This document shows positions 12,925-52,133 of a DNA stretch of 64,000 nucleotides, piece by piece. The position numbers were made by a program, and so were the translations under genes. Position 1 is the stretch's first letter, and every line of letters begins with the position of its first letter. The notes beneath the pieces are model-generated. The model was given only the letters and a program-made list of their open reading frames with translations. It searched no databases and had not been told where the DNA came from. The stretch lies in the sequence record PV740454.1, one strand, 5' to 3'.

Positions 12925-13410
12925 ATGTATAAATGCAAACATTTTACAATTAAAGAGATAGTCACGCCAGATATGTATTATGAATGGGGTGATGCTTGTT
13001 GGTCTCTTTTCGACGACCGTCTATTACGCACTCTAGACGCTCTTAGAGAACGTTTCGGTCCCTGCACCATAAACGATTGGAGTTGGGGCGGATCGTTCAA
13101 ATACAGCGGTTTCAGAGACGAGAATTACTACGGAACGACTACTAAGTACCTTGCAAGTCGTTCTCAGCACAAATATGGTCGTGCTGCTGACTGTAAATTC
13201 CGAGATTTCACGTCTGAAGAAGTACGTAAATACATTTTAGAGAACCCAGACGAATTCCCATACGTGAAATTCATCGAATGTGGTCCGTTAGCTAATGGTT
13301 CTCGTATGTCGTGGGTTCACATTGACGTTCGCAACAGTGAAGACGTTCAGTGCTGGTCTCCACTTGAAGGATTTATTAGCTCAAGTGAAGTAATTCGTCG
13401 CAAACTTTAG
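12925..13410 (+). CDS. Endolysin, peptidase M15 family
   Basis: HFTIKE, SGFR, SQH-x2-GRAAD, WVHIDVR zinc-peptidase motifs; CTAAATA at 12880. Confidence 0.88.
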   Translation: MYKCKHFTIKEIVTPDMYYEWGDACWSLFDDRLLRTLDALRERFGPCTINDWSWGGSFKYSGFRDENYYGTTTKYLASRSQHKYGRAADCKFRDFTSEEVRKYILENPDEFPYVKFIECGPLANGSRMSWVHIDVRNSEDVQCWSPLEGFISSSEVIRRKL

Positions 13411-23680: not shown

Positions 23681-24205
23681 CTATTTTCTTCGACTTGCTT
23701 TATTTGCTTTTCGCTTCGCTCTTCTAAGCTCTTTACGTTTAGCAATCTTATCAGCACGTCGAACAGCATCATAATCCGCTGCACAAGACGCTGCAAACGC
23801 ATCTGGCTTGAATACCGGCTCTTGACCCACATAGCCAAGAATCGTACCTTTAGCTTCGTTATACGCGATATGAGAACGATGTGCTGGGTCTGGGTTGATA
23901 TCGACGTGAACTTCGAAGCCTCGCGGACCGCACATCGGTTTAACTCTCAGTGCAGTTTCACCGGCTTTATAAACTTCAGTCATCAAACGACTTCGAATAC
24001 CATCTTTACTAGACATATAAGCTGGTTCAGTTTCGACAGATTTGAAAACTTGAGCACCTTTACTACCTTCAAGATGTATGATTATCACAGTAGCGTAACT
24101 GATCATGTCACTTTTACGCTTGCTATCACACCCGACGTATATAGTACTATTCGGATGACTGTTGTTGATAGCTGTTTCTATTGCTTCCCAATCGAACATT
24201 TTCAC
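23681..24205 (-). CDS. RNase H-like YkuK/DUF458 family protein
   Basis: IYVGCDS, RL-x2-EV, EVHVDIN, KPDAFAASCAAD acidic-residue motifs. Confidence 0.85.
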   Translation of the reverse strand: MKMFDWEAIETAINNSHPNSTIYVGCDSKRKSDMISYATVIIIHLEGSKGAQVFKSVETEPAYMSSKDGIRSRLMTEVYKAGETALRVKPMCGPRGFEVHVDINPDPAHRSHIAYNEAKGTILGYVGQEPVFKPDAFAASCAADYDAVRRADKIAKRKELRRAKRKANKASRRK

Positions 24206-24251: not shown

Positions 24252-25691
24252 TTAAAAACTGTATCGGTCAACGCCGACAGTTTTCAGCATGATCTTGACT
24301 GGCTCAAGTTCACCACCTAACAGTGAAGTTAGAATTGATGGGCTACAACCCGAAACCAGTGCAGTACCTGCTTCACCTGATTTAACAGGAACGTTGTCTA
24401 GACGACCACGAATGTTCCAGAAAACTAGCTGAGGCATATCATAACCAGCACGTGCGTACTTAGCTTTGATTGCATCGAAGTTAGCAACTTCTGCTCGACC
24501 ATACCAACCACCACCGCGATTTGCTTGGTCGAATTCCATGTCACTCATGATAAGCAACTTGGTTGGCATATCTTCTTGTGAAAGATTTGCACGACTAGCA
24601 CGTTCTAAAAGAACGTCGAAACATTTCCCGATGTTAGTGCTCATGTCTTCGCCTGAGCGATTCATGTTCGAAAGACGCTCTTTCAGCGTGTTACCGCTCA
24701 ACTTGTGGAAGTGCGGATTACTTGAGAACGAAATGAATTGATCTTTGAAGATACCTTCATTGCGCTCAGCAACGTAAATGCCGAGAGACATTGCTACTTG
24801 CTTACAAGTAACTGCGTTAGCAGCGTGTACACCGTTGATCGGTGTGCTCATAGATCCAGACACGTCTACAACAGGGATGATACGCTCATCAGAGCCTTCC
24901 ATGTAGTTCGGTAGAGCTTTCCATTGCTCGTTCGCTACAGATGCGTTACCGCGTTCAACGCTTTTAACAACATCGTATGGGAACAATGCACCAGCGTTGA
25001 TCTTCGCTTCACCTTTTTGTAGTGATTCGATGTAGTTTGTGTAACGAGTTTCAGCGTTACGACCGAATGCTTTTTGATAACGAGCAGACGCTACAGAAGG
25101 CAACTTACCGAAGTCGATTGCATCCCAATCTTTCGCACACATCTTTTGTTCAACAGTGTCAGACAAAAGAGCAAGAATCTTACGCCACTGCTTAGCAGTT
25201 ACACCAAGAGATTTGATCGTGCGCTTGAACACGTGACCGTTCTTGCTGTTTTCACGAGGGAACCACTTAGCAGCAAGCCCGTTTTTGTCATTGACAATCG
25301 CATTTGACCACATAGTGATCGCGTCTTTTTCGAGTTTAGTACCGAAAGCAACGATTAAGTCATCGAAACGACCTAATTCTGGTACTTTTGACATTACAGC
25401 GCGTGCCACTTCTGGCTGTTCATTACAAAGTTTAGCGAACAGAGTACGGAAAGTACCACGTTCACCTGCGCCACCTCGAACGTCACGAGACCATAGCAAG
25501 ATGCGTGTCGCCAGTTCTGGGTTTTCTGCAAACGCACGACCGAACAGTGTTTTAGACTGATCGTTGCCACGCATAGCAGCAATACCGAAGAACAAGTTTA
25601 GACACTCGTTACCTGAAGTGCTGTGCGTAACTGCACCGTTTGCTGTACGTGAATCGTTTGATTGCATAGCGTTCATAAATAGACTTGTCAT
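24252..25691 (-). CDS. TROVE/Ro60-like RNA-binding protein (DUF2828-type helical domain + vWA)
   Basis: RD-x-RGG-x-GER, GRFDDL, LAAKWFPRE; vWA MIDAS VVDVSGSM...T...SDMEFD; start re-assigned to ATG 25691 (GGAG + 9 nt). Confidence 0.8.
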   Translation of the reverse strand: MTSLFMNAMQSNDSRTANGAVTHSTSGNECLNLFFGIAAMRGNDQSKTLFGRAFAENPELATRILLWSRDVRGGAGERGTFRTLFAKLCNEQPEVARAVMSKVPELGRFDDLIVAFGTKLEKDAITMWSNAIVNDKNGLAAKWFPRENSKNGHVFKRTIKSLGVTAKQWRKILALLSDTVEQKMCAKDWDAIDFGKLPSVASARYQKAFGRNAETRYTNYIESLQKGEAKINAGALFPYDVVKSVERGNASVANEQWKALPNYMEGSDERIIPVVDVSGSMSTPINGVHAANAVTCKQVAMSLGIYVAERNEGIFKDQFISFSSNPHFHKLSGNTLKERLSNMNRSGEDMSTNIGKCFDVLLERASRANLSQEDMPTKLLIMSDMEFDQANRGGGWYGRAEVANFDAIKAKYARAGYDMPQLVFWNIRGRLDNVPVKSGEAGTALVSGCSPSILTSLLGGELEPVKIMLKTVGVDRYSF

Positions 25692-25724
25692 TGCTGTAAG
25701 CTCCATTATCAAGGATCAAAAATT

Positions 25725-26318
25725 ATGTTTCATATTGTATATCAAATCACAAATATAATAAACAATAAAATTTATGTCGGTAAACACTCAACTGAGAATA
25801 TACACGACGATTATATGGGTTCTGGTAAATTATTACTCAGAGCCATTTCAAAGTATGGCAAAGAAAATTTCACAAAAGAGATATTATTCGTATCTCACGA
25901 TGAGAATGAAGCATATCATAAAGAATCTGAAATTGTCAATGAAAATTTTGTGTTGCGCGAAGACACATACAATTTAAAAATTGGAGGTCTAGGTGGCTCA
26001 TCAGGTATAGAATCGCCATGCAAAGGTCGCGCTTTGAGTGAAGATACTAAACGAAAAATGAGAAAGAGTAAACACTTTTCTCAAAAACATTTAGATTTTC
26101 TTTCAGAAAAGCTATCAGCGTACAACAAATCTAGAAAGGGTAAATCTAGAACTGATCTTAACGGCTCATCTAACCCTATGCATAAAGGTACATGGGTAAC
26201 GCCAAAAGGTAAATTTGAGACATCAGAACTAGCTGCAACGGTAAATCAATGCAGCCAGTCTACTGTTGTAAGACGATGCAATAACCCAAATTTCACAGAT
26301 TGGTTCATCGAAAATTAG
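25725..26318 (+). mobile_element. Free-standing GIY-YIG homing endonuclease (Seg-like) with NUMOD3-like repeat
   Basis: IVYQITNIINNKIYVGKH...YMGSG...AISKYGKENFTKEIL; antisense to all neighbours. Confidence 0.9.
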
Positions 26319-26619
26319 CACGAATCATCGTTGCTGTATTTTCAAATACCTCAACAACGATGTAACCAGATGTTTCATACTGAGTTCGAACATTACGATA
26401 CCCGTGTGCGTCTAGCAATGATCTTACAATCGAAGCACCGCGCTTGTCTTTGTCAGATGCATGAATCGGCACAGATATTGTGAACGGGAATGTGATATCT
26501 TCTTTCAACGCTTCAGTGAATGACAATTCACATGCGTCGCGATAGTGCTTATTCAACACAATATTGAGATCACGTTCACGTTCGTTTATTTTCTGACTTA
26601 ACTGATCGTGTGTAATCAT
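26305..26619 (-). CDS. Hypothetical protein
   Basis: 104 aa; resembles the next ORF. Confidence 0.7.
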   Translation of the reverse strand: MITHDQLSQKINERERDLNIVLNKHYRDACELSFTEALKEDITFPFTISVPIHASDKDKRGASIVRSLLDAHGYRNVRTQYETSGYIVVEVFENTATMIRANFR

Positions 26620-28847: not shown

Positions 28848-28921
28848 GGCAATTCTCCATCTGTGTTTGAGTATAACTGTATTTAGTATCAAAATAACTT
28901 AAATTGCAAACTCCATAAACA

Positions 28922-28946
28922 AAAAAACCCGCTCAATGGCGGGTTC
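28922..28946 (-). terminator. Terminator ending the tRNA island transcript
   Basis: AACCCGCC-ATT-GAGCGGGTT + T tract. Confidence 0.8.
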
Positions 28947-28961
28947 TAATGTGCAATCAAC

Positions 28962-29235
28962 AGACATTCGAGAAGTGTTTTTTCGTCTTTCCTTAAATCT
29001 CATTTGACTAGCTTGTTTCTTATACAAGCAAGCATTTACGTATTCAGCGCAACGCCCATTCCGTTTAACGATACGAAAATCGTCGAAGTCATTTCCTACT
29101 TCACGAGAACACAGTTCCCTTAGCTGTCAGGCTTACGTCATCACTGAGAATGCAGCTAGTACGCCCCGGTCGTCACCTTGAAGATGACTATTCCAATTTT
29201 AGCTTCTTTGATTAGAATATTGCTGTACAATGTCT
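28962..29235 (-). ncRNA. Long structured RNA 1 (274 nt), Y-RNA-like closing stem + TACAGCAA
   Basis: AGACATT/AATGTCT closing helix; paralog of 33372-33581. Confidence 0.7.
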
Positions 29236-29821: not shown

Positions 29822-30163
29822 TTATAATTTGAATCCGATGCTCAACACCCAACGAGATTCATTAGCTTTAGTCGTGCGGTGATAGAACTTATCAGCACGA
29901 AACCCAAACAACCTATCTTTGATGATATGAAATGCACCATTACAGATGAATTCACCGCCAGATTTCGGTTTCTTTACAACCCAATTTATTCTATAATGGA
30001 ATTTACCAGGGTCTTTATGTTTAGGAATATACGAGTCTTTAGGATAATGAAACAAGTAGAAATCAAAGTGTTTGCTGTAAAACAGCGTGAATACTCGATA
30101 TCCAGTTGCCCATTTATCTAAGCCCCATTTAAATCTTCTTAACGTTGGTTTTTGAGTCTACAT
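29822..30163 (-). CDS. 2OG-Fe(II) oxygenase with in-frame TAG at codon 2 (read-through or pseudogene)
   Basis: AAAGG RBS-ATG-TAG-ACT...; same frame continues KWGLDKWATGYRVF...HYPKDSYIPKHKDP...GGEF...FYH...RWVLSIG. Confidence 0.7.
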
Positions 30164-32065: not shown

Positions 32066-32087
32066 AATATAGTTCTCATCATAAGAA

Positions 32088-32161
32088 TGGTAGCCCCTGT
32101 CGGATTCGAGCCGACTCTACTTCTGTGTAAGAGAAGCGTACTCCCATTATACTAAGGGGCT
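32088..32161 (-). tRNA. trnV: tRNA-Val(TAC)
   Basis: Loop CTTACAC, AGCCCCT/AGGGGCT, ACCA. Confidence 0.92.
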
Positions 32162-32162
32162 A

Positions 32163-32306
32163 TTAGACTGGGTAATTGTATTTCCATTGATCTGGGTCTG
32201 GTCTACCACAACGAATACACGATGTGCCTAACCAATTTCTCTGACCACAAACACAAGTGTAACCTTGTTGTTCGAAGTTTTCACCACCGATACTAAGAAT
32301 TTTCAT
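32163..32306 (-). CDS. Small zinc-ribbon-like protein
   Basis: MKILSIGG...CVCG-x7-CIRCG. Confidence 0.55.
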   Translation of the reverse strand: MKILSIGGENFEQQGYTCVCGQRNWLGTSCIRCGRPDPDQWKYNYPV

Positions 32307-32321
32307 ACAATCACCAAAAAT

Positions 32322-32395
32322 TGGAGCGGGTACACGGACTCGAACCGACTCTACTTCTGTGTAAGAGAAGCGTACTCCCATTATACTAAGGGACT
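32322..32395 (-). pseudogene. Chimeric tRNA: Val 5' portion fused to Gly 3' end; acceptor stem unpaired
   Basis: 5' part near-identical to 32088-32161; 3' GTGTACCCGCTCCA identical to tRNA-Gly 32763-32837. Confidence 0.85.
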
Positions 32396-32402
32396 ATTAA
32401 CC

Positions 32403-33371: not shown

Positions 33372-33581
33372 AGACAATACCGAAGTGTTTTTTCGTCTTT
33401 GACATGAATCGGAGTTGACTATCTTATTGGTTCTCAACAAGCAAATATCGTCTGTTTCAGCGACGCGCCTATCTGACTATTTCTAGACAGAGAGAATCTT
33501 TCCTTTCAAGCTGCACCGAAGCACTGCCCAGGTTAAGATCATCACCTTTTTAAGTAAGTAATTTGTTGCTGTATATTGTCT
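33372..33581 (-). ncRNA. Long structured RNA 2 (210 nt), Y-RNA-like closing stem + TACAGCAA
   Basis: AGACAATA/TATTGTCT closing helix; 19-nt identity with RNA 1. Confidence 0.7.
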
Positions 33582-33646
33582 AACTATCTGCACTCGTACG
33601 AATCTCGAAAGGTATCGTAGTTGTCGTGCAGAAGTTCTTAAATCTT

Positions 33647-34468: not shown

Positions 34469-34585
34469 ACTGAGTGTCATTACTTGCGCCATCCGAGACT
34501 AGAGATACCAACTCTAAACGGGATTCGAACCCGAAACATTTCTTTTATCGGAAGAATTTGTAATTGTTTGCTGAAAACACTCAAT
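34469..34585 (-). ncRNA. Y-RNA-like tRNA mimic (117 nt)
   Basis: 10-bp closing helix ATTGAGTGTT/GACACTCAGT; TTCAGCAA; anticodon-like hairpin TTCTT-CCGATAA-AAGAA; T arm CGGG-TTCGAAT-CCCG; no D arm or CCA. Confidence 0.75.
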
Positions 34586-35413: not shown

Positions 35414-35425
35414 ATTAAATTAAAC

Positions 35426-35484
35426 AGTAATCATTCTTTGCTTTTTCAAAATAAAAGTTTAGTATTGTTTGCTGCAAGATTACT
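35426..35484 (-). ncRNA. Minimal Y-RNA-like element (59 nt)
   Basis: AGTAATC/GATTACT closing helix, TGCAGCAA, hairpin CTTTT/AAAAG, AAAGAAT before the 3' strand. Confidence 0.65.
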
Positions 35485-35489
35485 TAAAC

Positions 35490-35705: not shown

Positions 35706-35802
35706 TGGCGGAAGACTAGGGATTCGAACCCTAACAAGCATTTCTGCTCCGACGGTTTTCAAGACCGTTGCCGCTACCCCGAATCTTTCGGCTAAGCCTT
35801 CC
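35706..35802 (-). tRNA. trnS: tRNA-Ser(TGA) with enlarged D loop
   Basis: Loop CTTGAAA, long variable arm, about 17-nt D loop. Confidence 0.88.
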
Positions 35803-35885: not shown

Positions 35886-35895
35886 TTTATTCAAC

Positions 35896-35981
35896 AGCTT
35901 GCGTTCTTTGGTCTGTTTATCTCTGTCTGAACTAAGTTCGTCTAGTGATCAATAGATTAAGTAATTTGCAGTATGCAAGCT
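35896..35981 (-). ncRNA. Y-RNA-like element (86 nt)
   Basis: AGCTTGC/GCAAGCT closing helix, TACTGCAA, AAAGAAC before the 3' strand. Confidence 0.65.
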
Positions 35982-35986
35982 AAATC

Positions 35987-37785: not shown

Positions 37786-37901
37786 TGGTAGTCGGGGCTG
37801 GATTCGAACCAGCGACCACGTGCTTAACAGGCAATTGAAAGAGTGCTGGAGCGATACTTGACAGTATCATTCTTCGTGCTCTACCACTGAGCTACCCGAC
37901 T
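37786..37901 (-). ncRNA. tRNA-like RNA with about 40-nt insertion in the anticodon arm
   Basis: Normal acceptor, D and T arms + ACCA; insert AAGAAT-[GATACT-GTCA-AGTATC]-GC-TCCAGCAC...TGC-CTGTTAA-GCA. Confidence 0.8.
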
Positions 37902-39682: not shown

Positions 39683-39803
39683 TGGTGGAGAGTACGGGAT
39701 TTGAACCACGTGACAAAAAGATTTACCTAGTTAAGGTTGCAGCATGAATGCTTGTCAGAATTCTTTAACATTCTTTCGCTCTACCAGACTGAGCTAACTC
39801 TCC
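39683..39803 (-). ncRNA. tRNA-like RNA with about 45-nt anticodon-arm insertion
   Basis: GGAGAGT/ACTCTCC-ACCA; normal D arm; AAAGA/TCTTT stem around an insert containing TGCTGCAA. Confidence 0.75.
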
Positions 39804-39817
39804 GTTGTAAAAACATA

Positions 39818-39941
39818 TTGATGCGGGTGCAGGAGTCGAACCTGCGTCACGATCTTATGAATGATATGCGAATTGATTGCCGTACAGATTCTTATCAGAA
39901 TCAGTTTTTGCTACGTGTGCTAACCACTACACCAACCCGCA
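39818..39941 (-). ncRNA. tRNA-like RNA with anticodon-arm insertion (paralog of 40192-40338)
   Basis: TGCGGGT/ACCCGCA; hairpin GATTCT-GATA-AGAATC then TACGGCAA; T arm GCAGG/CCTGC. Confidence 0.78.
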
Positions 39942-40191
39942 TCAATATGTTTTCGGGAGTGCTTGCATAGACATTTCTCTACACAAGCACAAAATCCTAT
40001 TATATGCCTTATCTAATCATAACACAATCTGGAATCGTGCGCTTTAAGTACGGGATTGATGACCCGTTCGCATATGATTAGCGTAAAAGTATGATTACGC
40101 ACCTTTTCTTCTTCAATGTCCAAGGCAAATAGGACGATGAATACTAGTGCGAGAAGATATACAATCAAATTGTTCACCTCGCTTTGTTAGT

Positions 40192-50988: not shown

Positions 50989-52133
50989 TGTTTATGGGAT
51001 TAGAAGGGTTTGAATGGTGGACTGGTGTTGTCGAAGATCGCACATCGGACCCTCTCAAGCTCGGTAGAATTAAAGTTAGGATGATTGGATTGCACCCTGA
51101 GAAGAAAAGCTCAGAGCAAGGTATTAGAACTGAAGAGTTGCTATGGGTTCACCCTATGCAATCGATTGATAACGCTGCAATGAATGGTATCGGCAAGACA
51201 TCACTCGGCGTTGTTGAAGGGACATGGGTTTTTGGTTTTTTCAGAGATAAATTACGTCAAGATGCAGTCGCAATGGGAGTGTTCCCTGGCATACCAGAAG
51301 ACATCCCAAATGGAAGCAACGGGTTTAATGACCCAAATGAGAAATACCCGCTTGCAGACAAATTGAATGAGCCCGATACAAACCGCCTAGCTCGTAACGA
51401 TGTCGATCCAGATGCGTATGACGAATCGCAATCGCAATCGAATTTCGACAGTGGTGAAGCAGAATACGTCTACAGACCACATCCTGTTATCGCTAGTAAG
51501 CGTTCGATGGAAGAAAAAGGCATTACAACTGCGGGGTATAACGCTTCTGGTCAGACGTACGATGAACCCGCAACACCGTACGCAGCTCAATATCCATTTA
51601 ATCACGTTCATGAATCTGAGTCTGGTCACATCCATGAAATTGATGACACTGAAGGCGCAGAGCGTCTACACACGTATCATAGAACAGGTACATTTGAAGA
51701 GATACATCCAGATGGTAGTCGTGTTACTAAAATCGTAGGTGATGACTTTGAGATAATCCACAGCAATAAGAATGTGCTAATAAAAGGGAATCTTAACATT
51801 ACTGTTGATGGTGACGCGACATTTTACTGCAAACAGAATGTAACTCAGCAGATTGATGGTGACTTGAAGCAACACATTAAGGGTAACGTAGATCAGCACG
51901 TTGAAATGAATGTAACTCAAACAGTTGGTGGTAATGTCCAGAGCAATGTATCAGGTGATTACACTCAACATGTTAGTGGGAATTACACTATTACAGTTGG
52001 TGGTTCTATGTCTGAGAGTGTCAGTTCGTCATATACTCGCTCGGCATCATCAATTAGTGATAACGGTGGTGGCGCGACGTTAGACTTAGCTGGATCTGCG
52101 TCATTAGACGGTACGACAGTGAATCTAGGGTGA
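50988..52133 (+). CDS. 5: Baseplate central spike gp5 without lysozyme domain
   Basis: OB fold (WWTGVVEDR-x-SDPLKLGRIKVR); ESGHIHEIDDT-x-GAER; V-x-G-N beta-helix repeats. Confidence 0.93.
   Translation: MFMGLEGFEWWTGVVEDRTSDPLKLGRIKVRMIGLHPEKKSSEQGIRTEELLWVHPMQSIDNAAMNGIGKTSLGVVEGTWVFGFFRDKLRQDAVAMGVFPGIPEDIPNGSNGFNDPNEKYPLADKLNEPDTNRLARNDVDPDAYDESQSQSNFDSGEAEYVYRPHPVIASKRSMEEKGITTAGYNASGQTYDEPATPYAAQYPFNHVHESESGHIHEIDDTEGAERLHTYHRTGTFEEIHPDGSRVTKIVGDDFEIIHSNKNVLIKGNLNITVDGDATFYCKQNVTQQIDGDLKQHIKGNVDQHVEMNVTQTVGGNVQSNVSGDYTQHVSGNYTITVGGSMSESVSSSYTRSASSISDNGGGATLDLAGSASLDGTTVNLG

What the first reader, a model, noticed from the sequence alone, without database searches (positions are those of the whole stretch)
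25689..25704. The RNA motif fills the Shine-Dalgarno-to-ATG spacer of the TROVE-like gene (autoregulation?)
Seen on the minus strand: GGAG-CTTACAGCA-ATG, so TACAGCAA overlaps the start codon. A weak mimic of the module follows (AGC...motif...GAAC-GCT within the first codons). Inference: free protein binds its own ribosome-binding site and represses translation until titrated by the ncRNAs. Caveat: ACAGCAATG also occurs at the gp10 start, so chance is possible.
Basis: partly seen in the sequence, partly recalled or inferred. Interest (0 to 1): 0.72.

Follow-up and report, generated by a model that had tools for sequence, protein, structure and literature searches.

The report
Ro-like gene's RBS carries partner-RNA motif
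The ribosome-binding site of a phage Ro60-like RNA-binding protein gene carries the 10-base signature of small RNAs that sit next to such genes in many phages, which fits self-regulation by RNA mimicry, but in this phage a homing-endonuclease insertion has left only part of the site.

Summary
On the minus strand, GGAG (25704-25701), CTTACAGCA and ATG (25691-25689) are present, and ATG 25691 is the likely start.

The window is Vibrio phage CZ01, a KVP40-like phage. The gene (DUF2828+DUF7788) has a predicted Ro60 fold.

CUUACAGCAA is the signature box of a small-RNA family: terminal helix, box, A-rich stretch, helix, UG. CZ01 has at least four copies in its tRNA cluster. The same design lies beside DUF2828 genes in many unrelated viral contigs, often 8-49 nt after the stop codon. 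It matches the design of Dictyostelium Class I RNAs, below Rfam's threshold.

In relatives without the homing endonuclease, the gene's leader is a complete 42-44 nt mini-module. It encloses the Shine-Dalgarno sequence and places the AUG in the 3' helix strand. An independent covariance model scores these leaders 10-20 bits.

In CZ01 a GIY-YIG endonuclease cassette replaced the promoter and the 5' helix strand. Only the box remains, and the model gives 3.7 bits.

Autoregulation is plausible but inferred. It is better supported in the relatives than in CZ01. Protein-RNA binding is untested.

The parts
25689..25704 (-). The finding: SD GGAG (25704-25701), box CUUACAGCAA (25700-25691), start ATG (25691-25689).
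   Evidence: Sequence read. Conserved letter for letter in the other endonuclease-bearing phages VH1_2019 and D482. The box matches the Class I / module consensus.
24252..25691 (-). Ro60-like RNA-binding protein gene (479 aa; Pfam DUF2828 + DUF7788; vWA MIDAS DxSxS at D276/S278/S280).
   Evidence: Pfam hits; PHROG 850 'RNA-binding protein'. AlphaFold model pLDDT 80, pTM 0.82. Foldseek: Ro60 1yvr E 5.6e-8, TM 0.63; phage phiLo Ro60 9l5y. Invariant residues.
25725..26318 (+). GIY-YIG (SegE-like) homing endonuclease cassette, divergent from the Ro-like gene. It replaced the ancestral promoter and the 5' part of the leader.
   Evidence: Pfam hit; annotation. Absent in nt-1, KVP40, ValKK3, 1.081.O and F86, which carry TTTACA-N16/17-TATAAT plus a full leader module at this place.
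35423..35486 (-). Small RNA 'D': helix AGTAATC/GATTACT, box U-UGCAGCAA, 3' CUGU. A typical 60-nt module RNA.
   Evidence: Model R1, built only from unrelated viral contigs, scores 42.5 bits, E 9e-11. Rfam Dicty_Class_I_RNA scores 27 bits against a gathering score of 41.5. Conserved in nt-1, KVP40 and ValKK3.
35893..35983 (-). Small RNA 'E': helix AGCTTGC/GCAAGCT, box A-UACUGCAA, AAAGAAC before the 3' strand.
   Evidence: Sequences. R1 scores 18 bits, E 0.007. Conserved in five phages.
33372..33581 (-). Structured RNA 'B' (about 210 nt) closed by the same module: AGACAAT / ATTGTCT, box A-UACAGCAA.
   Evidence: Compensatory changes in the closing helix occur in 1.081.O (GATAAT/ATTATC) and F86 (GGCAAT/ATTGCC). 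RNAalifold finds 18 pairs with double changes. No Rfam hit.
28962..29235 (-). Structured RNA 'A' (about 274 nt), a paralogue of B, just 3' of tRNA-Ser: helix AGACATT / AATGTCT, box G-UACAGCAA. An intrinsic terminator follows at about 28921-28944.
   Evidence: Its helix has the same sequence as the leader helix of the endonuclease-free relatives.
34529..34585 (-). Weak candidate module 'C-like' (GAGTGT-U-UUCAGCAA) beside a T-arm-like hairpin.
   Evidence: R1 scores 12 bits, E 0.54. Clear orthologues of about 110 nt, with T-arm then D-arm-like hairpins, occur in D482, F86 and 1.081.O.
25640..25647 (-). Second TACAGCAA, inside codons 15-17 (T-A-N). Explained by coding.
   Evidence: T16, N18 and G19 are invariant in the protein family. 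The octamer is absent at this place in 1.081.O.
23681..24205 (-). RNaseH-like (PF04308 / DUF458, YkuK) gene immediately downstream, syntenic in the clade. A candidate alternative factor.

Best explanation
The box at the RBS (CUUACAGCAA) is the sequence signature of a family of small RNAs. Their design is a 6-7 bp helix joining the 5' and 3' ends, the box directly after the 5' strand, an A-rich stretch before the 3' strand, and a 3' CUG(U).

These RNAs are genetically linked to DUF2828 Ro60-fold genes in many phages. They are therefore most likely the protein's partner RNAs, analogous to Y RNAs for Ro60.

In the KVP40-like clade the gene's own leader is a miniature copy of this module, with the SD in its loop and the AUG in its 3' helix strand. 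Free protein would bind it and block initiation. The abundant module RNAs from the tRNA cluster would compete for the protein and relieve the block. This would be autogenous control by mimicry.

In CZ01 and the other endonuclease-bearing phages, a GIY-YIG cassette arrived with its own flank and removed the promoter and the 5' helix strand. Only the box survives, now filling the SD-AUG spacer. Binding there would still occlude the 30S subunit, but probably with lower affinity.

Shown here: the sequence, the family, the linkage, the fold, the leader modules and the truncation. Inferred: protein-RNA binding, repression and titration.

My sub-estimates:
- Box is related to the module rather than chance: about 0.9.
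- Module RNAs are ligands of the protein: about 0.7.
- Leader module regulates translation in endonuclease-free relatives: about 0.5.
- The site is still functional in CZ01: about 0.3.
For: Fold: the model hits Ro60 1yvr and phage phiLo Ro60.

Module family in CZ01 and relatives: 25 of 140 box-like octamers on the gene strand have a perfect 7-bp helix at offset 1 within 300 nt, against 1 of 74 on the other strand and about 2% expected. The helix covaries.

Linkage in 78 viral contigs with 42-54% identical proteins:
- 60 of 185 boxes on the gene strand have the helix, against 7 of 61 antisense and 26 of 638 in control contigs.
- 40 of 75 loci have a module starting 8-49 nt after the stop codon.
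- 72 of 78 loci have at least one module.
- Several loci have the module between the promoter and the SD of the gene.

The same modules occur in E. coli phage SUSP1 and Aeromonas phage phiWae14 beside their DUF2828 genes.

Leader modules: GACATT and ACAGCA are invariant at a constant 42-44 nt span in five lineages. They are the only mRNA leaders with the module in about 280 kb examined.

Independent model R1 scores:
- ValKK3 leader 20.2 bits (E 0.0016).
- KVP40 14.8 bits.
- nt-1 13.7 bits.
- F86 10.3 bits.

Precedent: phage Ro60 binds phage-encoded Y-like RNAs encoded next to its gene (PMC12135203). Ro60 contacts mainly the 5' strand of the terminal stem (PMC4201824).
Against: - There are no binding, expression or end-mapping data.
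- The CZ01 site scores only 3.7 bits with R1 and has no credible helix.
- The leader helix in relatives is weak on its own (about -5 kcal/mol, z > 0). It never varies, so it gives no covariation evidence.
- Its 3' strand (A-ATG-TC) is fixed by the Met-Ser start, also in phiWae14, which has no box.
- The box in leaders does not track box variants in the RNAs of the same phage: F86 RNAs have UACUGCAA while its leader has UACAGCAU.
- SUSP1, phiWae14 and most metagenomic homologues have no box at the RBS.
- Conservation of 13 nt among three endonuclease-bearing lineages is weak evidence. They share the cassette by descent.
- The module sets were partly selected by requiring a perfect helix, so pairing percentages are circular. 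Only the enrichment figures are not.
Confidence: 0.5

Rival explanations
1. Non-functional relic. The box at the CZ01 RBS descends from the ancestral leader module, but the endonuclease insertion destroyed the operator. The box persists only through recent common descent of the cassette and ordinary constraint on the SD-AUG spacer.
For: The promoter and 5' helix strand are gone, and the cassette flank differs from nt-1, which is otherwise 97% identical. R1 scores 3.7 bits. The three endonuclease-bearing lineages share the cassette. Microhomology (CAAT) between the box and the ancestral start region could have produced TACAGCAATG by deletion (my inference).
Against: The 10-nt box is a perfect match to the family consensus. 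It is unchanged in D482 although the surrounding region is only about 79% identical. Its position in the spacer is where a bound protein would be most effective.
Confidence: 0.3
2. The module is a processing or stability element recognised by another factor: a host RNase, the adjacent RNaseH-like DUF458 protein, or an RRM-type protein as reported for Dictyostelium Class I RNA. The leader copy then controls mRNA processing or decay rather than binding the Ro-like protein.
For: Modules lie directly after tRNA 3' ends in polycistronic tRNA clusters. The DUF458 gene is syntenic with the Ro-like gene. In Dictyostelium the only directly shown binder of a Class I RNA is the RRM protein Rnp1A (PMC7919456).
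Against: The tightest linkage is to the DUF2828 gene itself: 8-49 nt after its stop codon in contigs without a nearby tRNA cluster. Ro-Y RNA pairs show exactly this kind of adjacency.
Confidence: 0.12
3. Pure chance: an 8-10 nt match that happens to lie at this RBS.
For: ACAGCAATG also occurs at another gene start, and two copies are within expectation. Short A/C-rich words are common.
Against: The octamer is four-fold enriched and strand-biased. Orthologous leaders in all eight phages examined carry the box within 35 nt of the AUG. This is the one gene whose product is linked to box RNAs.
Confidence: 0.05

Closest known systems
Ro60 (TROVE) - Y RNA ribonucleoproteins: bacterial Rsr-YrlA/YrlB and Thermus phage phiLo Ro60-Yrl1/Yrl2
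   Same: Ring-shaped HEAT-repeat plus vWA protein (fold match). Several small partner-RNA genes are encoded beside the protein gene on the same strand. The RNAs are closed by a helix between their 5' and 3' ends, with a conserved motif on the 5' side. One RNA type (C, in relatives and SUSP1) carries T-arm and D-arm-like hairpins, as YrlA does. The locus is associated with tRNA and RNA-repair genes.
   Different: The protein is Pfam DUF2828/DUF7788, not TROVE, at sequence level. The RNA motif is (C)UUACAGCAA, not GNCGAA or GGUCCGA. No Rfam YrlA or Y_RNA match was found. No autoregulatory leader is described for Ro60 in the papers searched.
Dictyostelium Class I RNAs (Rfam RF01414)
   Same: Nearly identical design: about 60 nt, 5' (A)AG, a 6-7 bp terminal stem whose sequence varies but whose pairing is kept, the motif CUUACAGCAA directly after the 5' strand, an A/U-rich variable body, and a 3' CUGU (PMC7919456).
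   Different: The phage RNAs score 27 bits against a gathering score of 41.5, and none of 19 loci reaches it. There is no DUSE promoter. The genes are bacterial-virus genes in tRNA clusters or beside DUF2828 genes. Class I RNAs were reported as unique to Dictyostelia, with an RRM protein as binder. Whether this is homology or convergence is open.
Autogenous translational control by mimicry of the primary RNA ligand (ribosomal protein operators, thrS operator, T4 gp32/RegA type; from my own knowledge)
   Same: The operator overlaps the SD and AUG. It resembles the protein's main RNA ligand. Abundant ligand RNA would titrate the protein and de-repress translation.
   Different: Nothing is shown experimentally. 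In CZ01 only the single-stranded box remains. The regulator would be a Ro60-fold protein, for which no such loop is known.

Membership tests
Ro60/TROVE - Y RNA RNP | HEAT-repeat ring plus vWA/MIDAS fold | tested here: met
   AlphaFold model pTM 0.82. Foldseek hits 1yvr at E 5.6e-8, TM 0.63/0.59 over the full length, plus 9l5y and 2i91. DxSxS is invariant.
Ro60/TROVE - Y RNA RNP | Sequence signature of the TROVE domain (Pfam) or sequence similarity to solved Ro60 | tested here: not met
   Pfam gives only DUF2828 and DUF7788. phmmer against PDB finds no Ro60. NCBIfam finds nothing.
Ro60/TROVE - Y RNA RNP | Small RNA genes adjacent to the protein gene | tested here: met
   40 of 75 viral loci have a module 8-49 nt after the stop codon, and 72 of 78 have at least one module on the gene strand. 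In CZ01 the modules lie 3.5-10 kb upstream on the same strand.
Ro60/TROVE - Y RNA RNP | Canonical Y RNA motif (GGUCCGA / GNCGAA) or an Rfam Y_RNA/YrlA match | tested here: not met
   No match at gathering score. The single 28-bit YrlA hit spans the T-arm and D-arm of two neighbouring tRNA-like genes. RNA C of D482 gives no hit.
Ro60/TROVE - Y RNA RNP | Protein physically binds the RNA | not testable with these tools
   Needs gel-shift, RIP or CLIP experiments.
Dictyostelium Class I RNA (RF01414) | Short terminal stem plus CCUUACAGCAA motif next to the 5' strand, 5' AAG and 3' CUGU, about 60 nt | tested here: met
   RNA D aligns end to end with the Rfam consensus. Module table; 24 distinct 57-71 nt examples. 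The motif is given in PMC5054030 and PMC7919456. RNA ends are not mapped.
Dictyostelium Class I RNA (RF01414) | Rfam gathering score (41.5 bits) | tested here: not met
   27.0 bits in CZ01 and 26.9 bits in SUSP1. No hit at gathering score in 19 viral loci.
Autogenous translational operator (mimicry) | Operator overlaps SD/AUG and resembles the ligand RNA | tested here: inconclusive
   Relatives: a full module over SD and AUG, with R1 at 20.2, 14.8, 13.7 and 10.3 bits. CZ01: box only, 3.7 bits.
Autogenous translational operator (mimicry) | Protein represses its own translation; ligand RNA relieves the repression | not testable with these tools
   Needs reporter fusions and toeprinting.

The most novel reading that the evidence does not exclude
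DUF2828 Ro60-fold proteins and 'Class I-type' small RNAs (terminal helix plus CUUACAGCAA) form a second, widespread Ro/Y-like ribonucleoprotein. It runs from tRNA-rich phages, possibly through giant viruses, to dictyostelid amoebae. Under this reading the enigmatic Dictyostelium Class I RNAs have a conserved Ro-like partner, and in KVP40-like phages the protein controls its own translation through a Class I module built into its mRNA leader.
Probability: 0.3. Interest if true: 0.9.

Novelty: new variant of a known kind. Interest (0 to 1): 0.75.

Why it matters
If the inference holds, it has four consequences.
- It defines the RNA partners of a very common but uncharacterised phage protein family: 710 phage records carry a homologue.
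- It gives the first case of a Ro60-fold protein regulating itself through an mRNA copy of its partner RNA.
- It shows how a selfish homing endonuclease can cut through such a regulatory site.
- It links phage RNAs to Dictyostelium Class I RNAs. Those RNAs have been thought unique to social amoebae, and their function has been open since 2004. This suggests a concrete protein partner to test.

Tried and rejected
- **Promoter reading of the box** (sigma-70 -35 or -10, or a T4 MotA-box on the other strand). Rejected because the flanking helix covaries as RNA and includes G-U pairs only on the minus-strand sense. Hexamer spacings also do not fit (and my reading).
- **Scan of viral contigs with AGACAWTNTACAGCAA**. 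I reused them only as control loci.
- **Rfam searches.** No family reaches the gathering score for any module RNA. The YrlA sub-threshold hit is an artefact of two adjacent tRNA-like genes.
- **Pattern search for the 3' conserved loop of RNAs A/B in all loci**. I replaced it with scripts.
- **Thermodynamic test of the leader hairpin**. The hairpin is not stable on its own, so it is not evidence by itself.
- **Near-match GACATTTTACTGCAA at 51818 (+).** It lies inside a coding gene and was dismissed.
- **CZ01 site 30072-30079.** It has the box but no helix and no orthologue.
- **Genome-wide scan.** Only 114 of 247 kb of CZ01 were scanned (window plus 1-50 kb).
- **Literature.** Nothing was found on DUF2828 function, KVP40 small RNAs or Ro60 autoregulation. 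Avesson et al. 2011, which lists the four Class I RNA-binding proteins, is not held.
- **Dictyostelid DUF2828 genes.** I could not test with these tools whether dictyostelids encode DUF2828.

Full report
**Identity of the window and the gene.** The window is Vibrio phage CZ01 (PV740454.1, 100% identical), a KVP40-like member of the Straboviridae. The gene at 24252-25691 (minus strand) matches Pfam DUF2828 and DUF7788 and PHROG 850 'RNA-binding protein'. It shows no sequence-level match to TROVE or to solved Ro60. An AlphaFold model built on 32 homologues (pLDDT 80, pTM 0.82) superposes over its full length on Ro60: 1yvr at E 5.6e-8 and TM 0.63, plus Thermus phage phiLo Ro60 9l5y. The vWA MIDAS residues DxSxS are invariant. 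'TROVE-like' is therefore right at the level of fold.

**The observation.** TACAGCAA is four-fold enriched in the window and biased to the gene strand. The true start is most likely ATG 25691:
- It has the SD at a 9-nt spacing.
- It gives an N-terminus that aligns with all homologues.
- It is the annotated start in nt-1, KVP40, VH1_2019 and D482.

The upstream ATG 25706 used in the CZ01 record has no SD and is TTG in D482.

**What the motif belongs to.** The box is the 5' junction of a terminal module shared by several small RNAs in the tRNA cluster. The module is a 7-bp helix that starts AG and ends CU, one free base, U(A/G)C(N)GCAA, a variable body, an A-rich stretch (AAAGAAC, AUAAAC and similar), the 3' helix strand, then GU. 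CZ01 has four clear copies:
- RNA D (35423-35486).
- RNA E (35893-35983).
- RNA B (33372-33581).
- RNA A (28962-29235, followed by a terminator).

A weak fifth candidate lies at 34529-34585. In eight related phage stretches, 25 of 140 box-like octamers on the gene strand have a perfect 7-bp helix at the right offset, against 1 of 74 on the other strand and about 2% by chance. The helix covaries, for example GACAAT/ATTGTC, GACATT/AATGTC, GATAAT/ATTATC and GGCAAT/ATTGCC in A/B. RNA B has 18 pairs with double changes. A promoter reading is therefore excluded: the box is transcribed and functions as RNA.

**Link to the protein.** The decisive comparative result came from 78 viral contigs (IMG/VR) that encode 42-54% identical DUF2828 proteins and share no nucleotide similarity with CZ01.
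- 60 of 185 boxes on the gene strand have the helix, against 7 of 61 on the antisense strand and 26 of 638 in unrelated control contigs.
- In 40 of 75 contigs a 57-66 nt module RNA starts 8-49 nt after the gene's stop codon.
- 72 of 78 contigs have at least one module.
- In several contigs (L068, L071, L072, L075, L081) the module lies between a promoter and the gene's SD.

E. coli phage SUSP1 and Aeromonas phage phiWae14 show the same modules in the tRNA cluster beside their DUF2828 genes. The helix sequence differs widely among these RNAs while the second pair, G-C, never changes. Pairing in that set is 100% by construction, so only the diversity is informative. This adjacency is the hallmark of Ro60-Y RNA pairs, including the phage phiLo pair that has been shown to bind (PMC12135203, PMC4201824).

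**The gene's own leader.** In the five lineages without the homing endonuclease (nt-1, KVP40, ValKK3, 1.081.O, F86), the gene is preceded by TTTACA-N16/17-TATAAT. The leader then has invariant GACATT, one or two bases, ACAGCA, the SD, (R)AAC, and AATGTC, which contains the ATG. This is a complete 42-44 nt module with the SD in its loop. It is the only mRNA leader with a module in about 280 kb examined.

I built covariance model R1 only from the 22 metagenomic DUF2828-adjacent RNAs. Its scores are:
- CZ01 RNA D: 42.5 bits (E 9e-11).
- ValKK3 leader: 20.2 bits (E 0.0016).
- KVP40 leader: 14.8 bits.
- nt-1 leader: 13.7 bits.
- F86 leader: 10.3 bits.
- 1.081.O leader: below the reporting limit.

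Caveats apply. The 6-bp leader helix is weak on its own. It never varies. Its 3' strand is dictated by the Met-Ser start, which is also present in phiWae14, a phage without any box.

**What happened in CZ01.** CZ01, VH1_2019 and the D48x phages carry a GIY-YIG (SegE-like) endonuclease gene (25725-26318, plus strand) only 33 nt from the ATG. nt-1, which is 97% identical elsewhere, lacks it. The cassette, with its flank, replaced the promoter, the GACATT strand, the old SD and the first codons. What remains is GGAGC-UUACAGCAA-UG.

The box is a perfect match to the family consensus, but there is no helix. R1 gives 3.7 bits. The finding in CZ01 is therefore best described as a truncated operator. 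Whether it still binds the protein cannot be told from sequence.

**Mechanism.** My preferred model is as follows:
1. The Ro-like protein binds module RNAs through the single-stranded box next to the terminal helix.
2. It also binds the module in its own leader, which hides the SD and AUG.
3. The module RNAs made from the tRNA cluster compete for the protein, so synthesis continues until the protein exceeds its RNA partners.

In CZ01 a bound protein would sit directly on the SD-AUG spacer. The rivals are a dead relic, a processing or stability signal used by another factor (for example the syntenic RNaseH-like DUF458 protein), and chance.

**Comparison with known systems.** No Rfam family reaches its threshold. 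The best sub-threshold match is Dictyostelium Class I RNA (27 bits against 41.5). The resemblance is specific: a 6-bp terminal stem of free sequence, CCUUACAGCAA after the 5' strand, 5' AAG and 3' CUGU, at about 60 nt (PMC7919456, PMC5054030). Those RNAs were reported as unique to Dictyostelia. DUF2828 also occurs in eukaryotes and mimivirus-like sequences. I could not test whether dictyostelids have it.

I file the system as working like a Ro60-Y RNA particle with an autogenous operator. I do not file it as a member of the YrlA or Class I Rfam families.

**Limits.** All functional steps are inferred. Module sets were partly chosen by perfect helices. The metagenomic contigs include near-duplicates: 24 distinct short RNAs among the 60 modules. 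Only 114 of the 247 kb of CZ01 were scanned.

Noticed in passing
window 37789-37901 (-), 39686-39803 (-), 39821-39942 (-), 35710-35802 (-): These are tRNA-like genes of 113-122 nt that ARAGORN does not call. They match the tRNA model end to end but carry 45-54 nt inserted in the anticodon arm. Two others are tRNA-Sec-like, below threshold. KVP40 annotates the equivalents as tRNA-Pseudo-3/4/5. They could be intron-bearing tRNAs or another class of tRNA mimic, and are alternative ligands for the Ro-like protein.
   Followed up: partly
window 25706 vs 25691 (-): The GenBank record of CZ01 starts CZ01_174 at ATG 25706, five codons upstream of the start supported by the SD, by homologues and by the other records.
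   Followed up: yes
window 25725-26318 (+) and 26305-26619 (-): The homing endonuclease gene overlaps the 3' end of the upstream minus-strand ORF by 14 nt and leaves no intergenic promoter for the Ro-like gene. Transcription must come from read-through or from sigma-70-like sites inside the endonuclease gene, for example TTGACA-18-TATGCT at 25939-25910 (-).
   Followed up: partly
L209 (E. coli phage SUSP1) 9001-16309; L207 (Aeromonas phage phiWae14) 5734-21431; L064, L069, L074, L078: DUF2828 Ro-like genes sit directly beside large tRNA clusters in several unrelated phage groups. L065 has a tmRNA 2.3 kb downstream. This suggests a role tied to tRNA or RNA quality control or repair.
   Followed up: partly
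L085 (D482) about 24590-24700 (-); L206 (F86) 13167-13288; L205 (1.081.O) 13276-13397; L209 11455-11580: These are module RNAs of about 110 nt whose body holds a T-arm followed by a D-arm-like hairpin, the same order as in bacterial YrlA. Rfam YrlA does not match them.
   Followed up: partly
window 32084-32165 and 32318-32399: A 65-nt segment of tRNA-Val is duplicated at 95% identity 234 nt away, giving a partial pseudo-tRNA (27 bits, just under the tRNA threshold).
   Followed up: no
window 33582-33640 and orthologues: A small CUUCGG-capped hairpin precedes RNA B in KVP40, VH1_2019, 1.081.O and F86. It may mark the 3' end of another processed element.
   Followed up: no
window 28962-29235 and 33372-33581: RNAs A and B share a 4-bp helix (covarying CCGA/UCGG, GAGA/UCUC, GUGA/UCAC) that closes a conserved 25-nt loop (GAUU..AAAGACGAAAAAACA), preceded by UAGUCAA. 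This large conserved core has no known family.
   Followed up: partly
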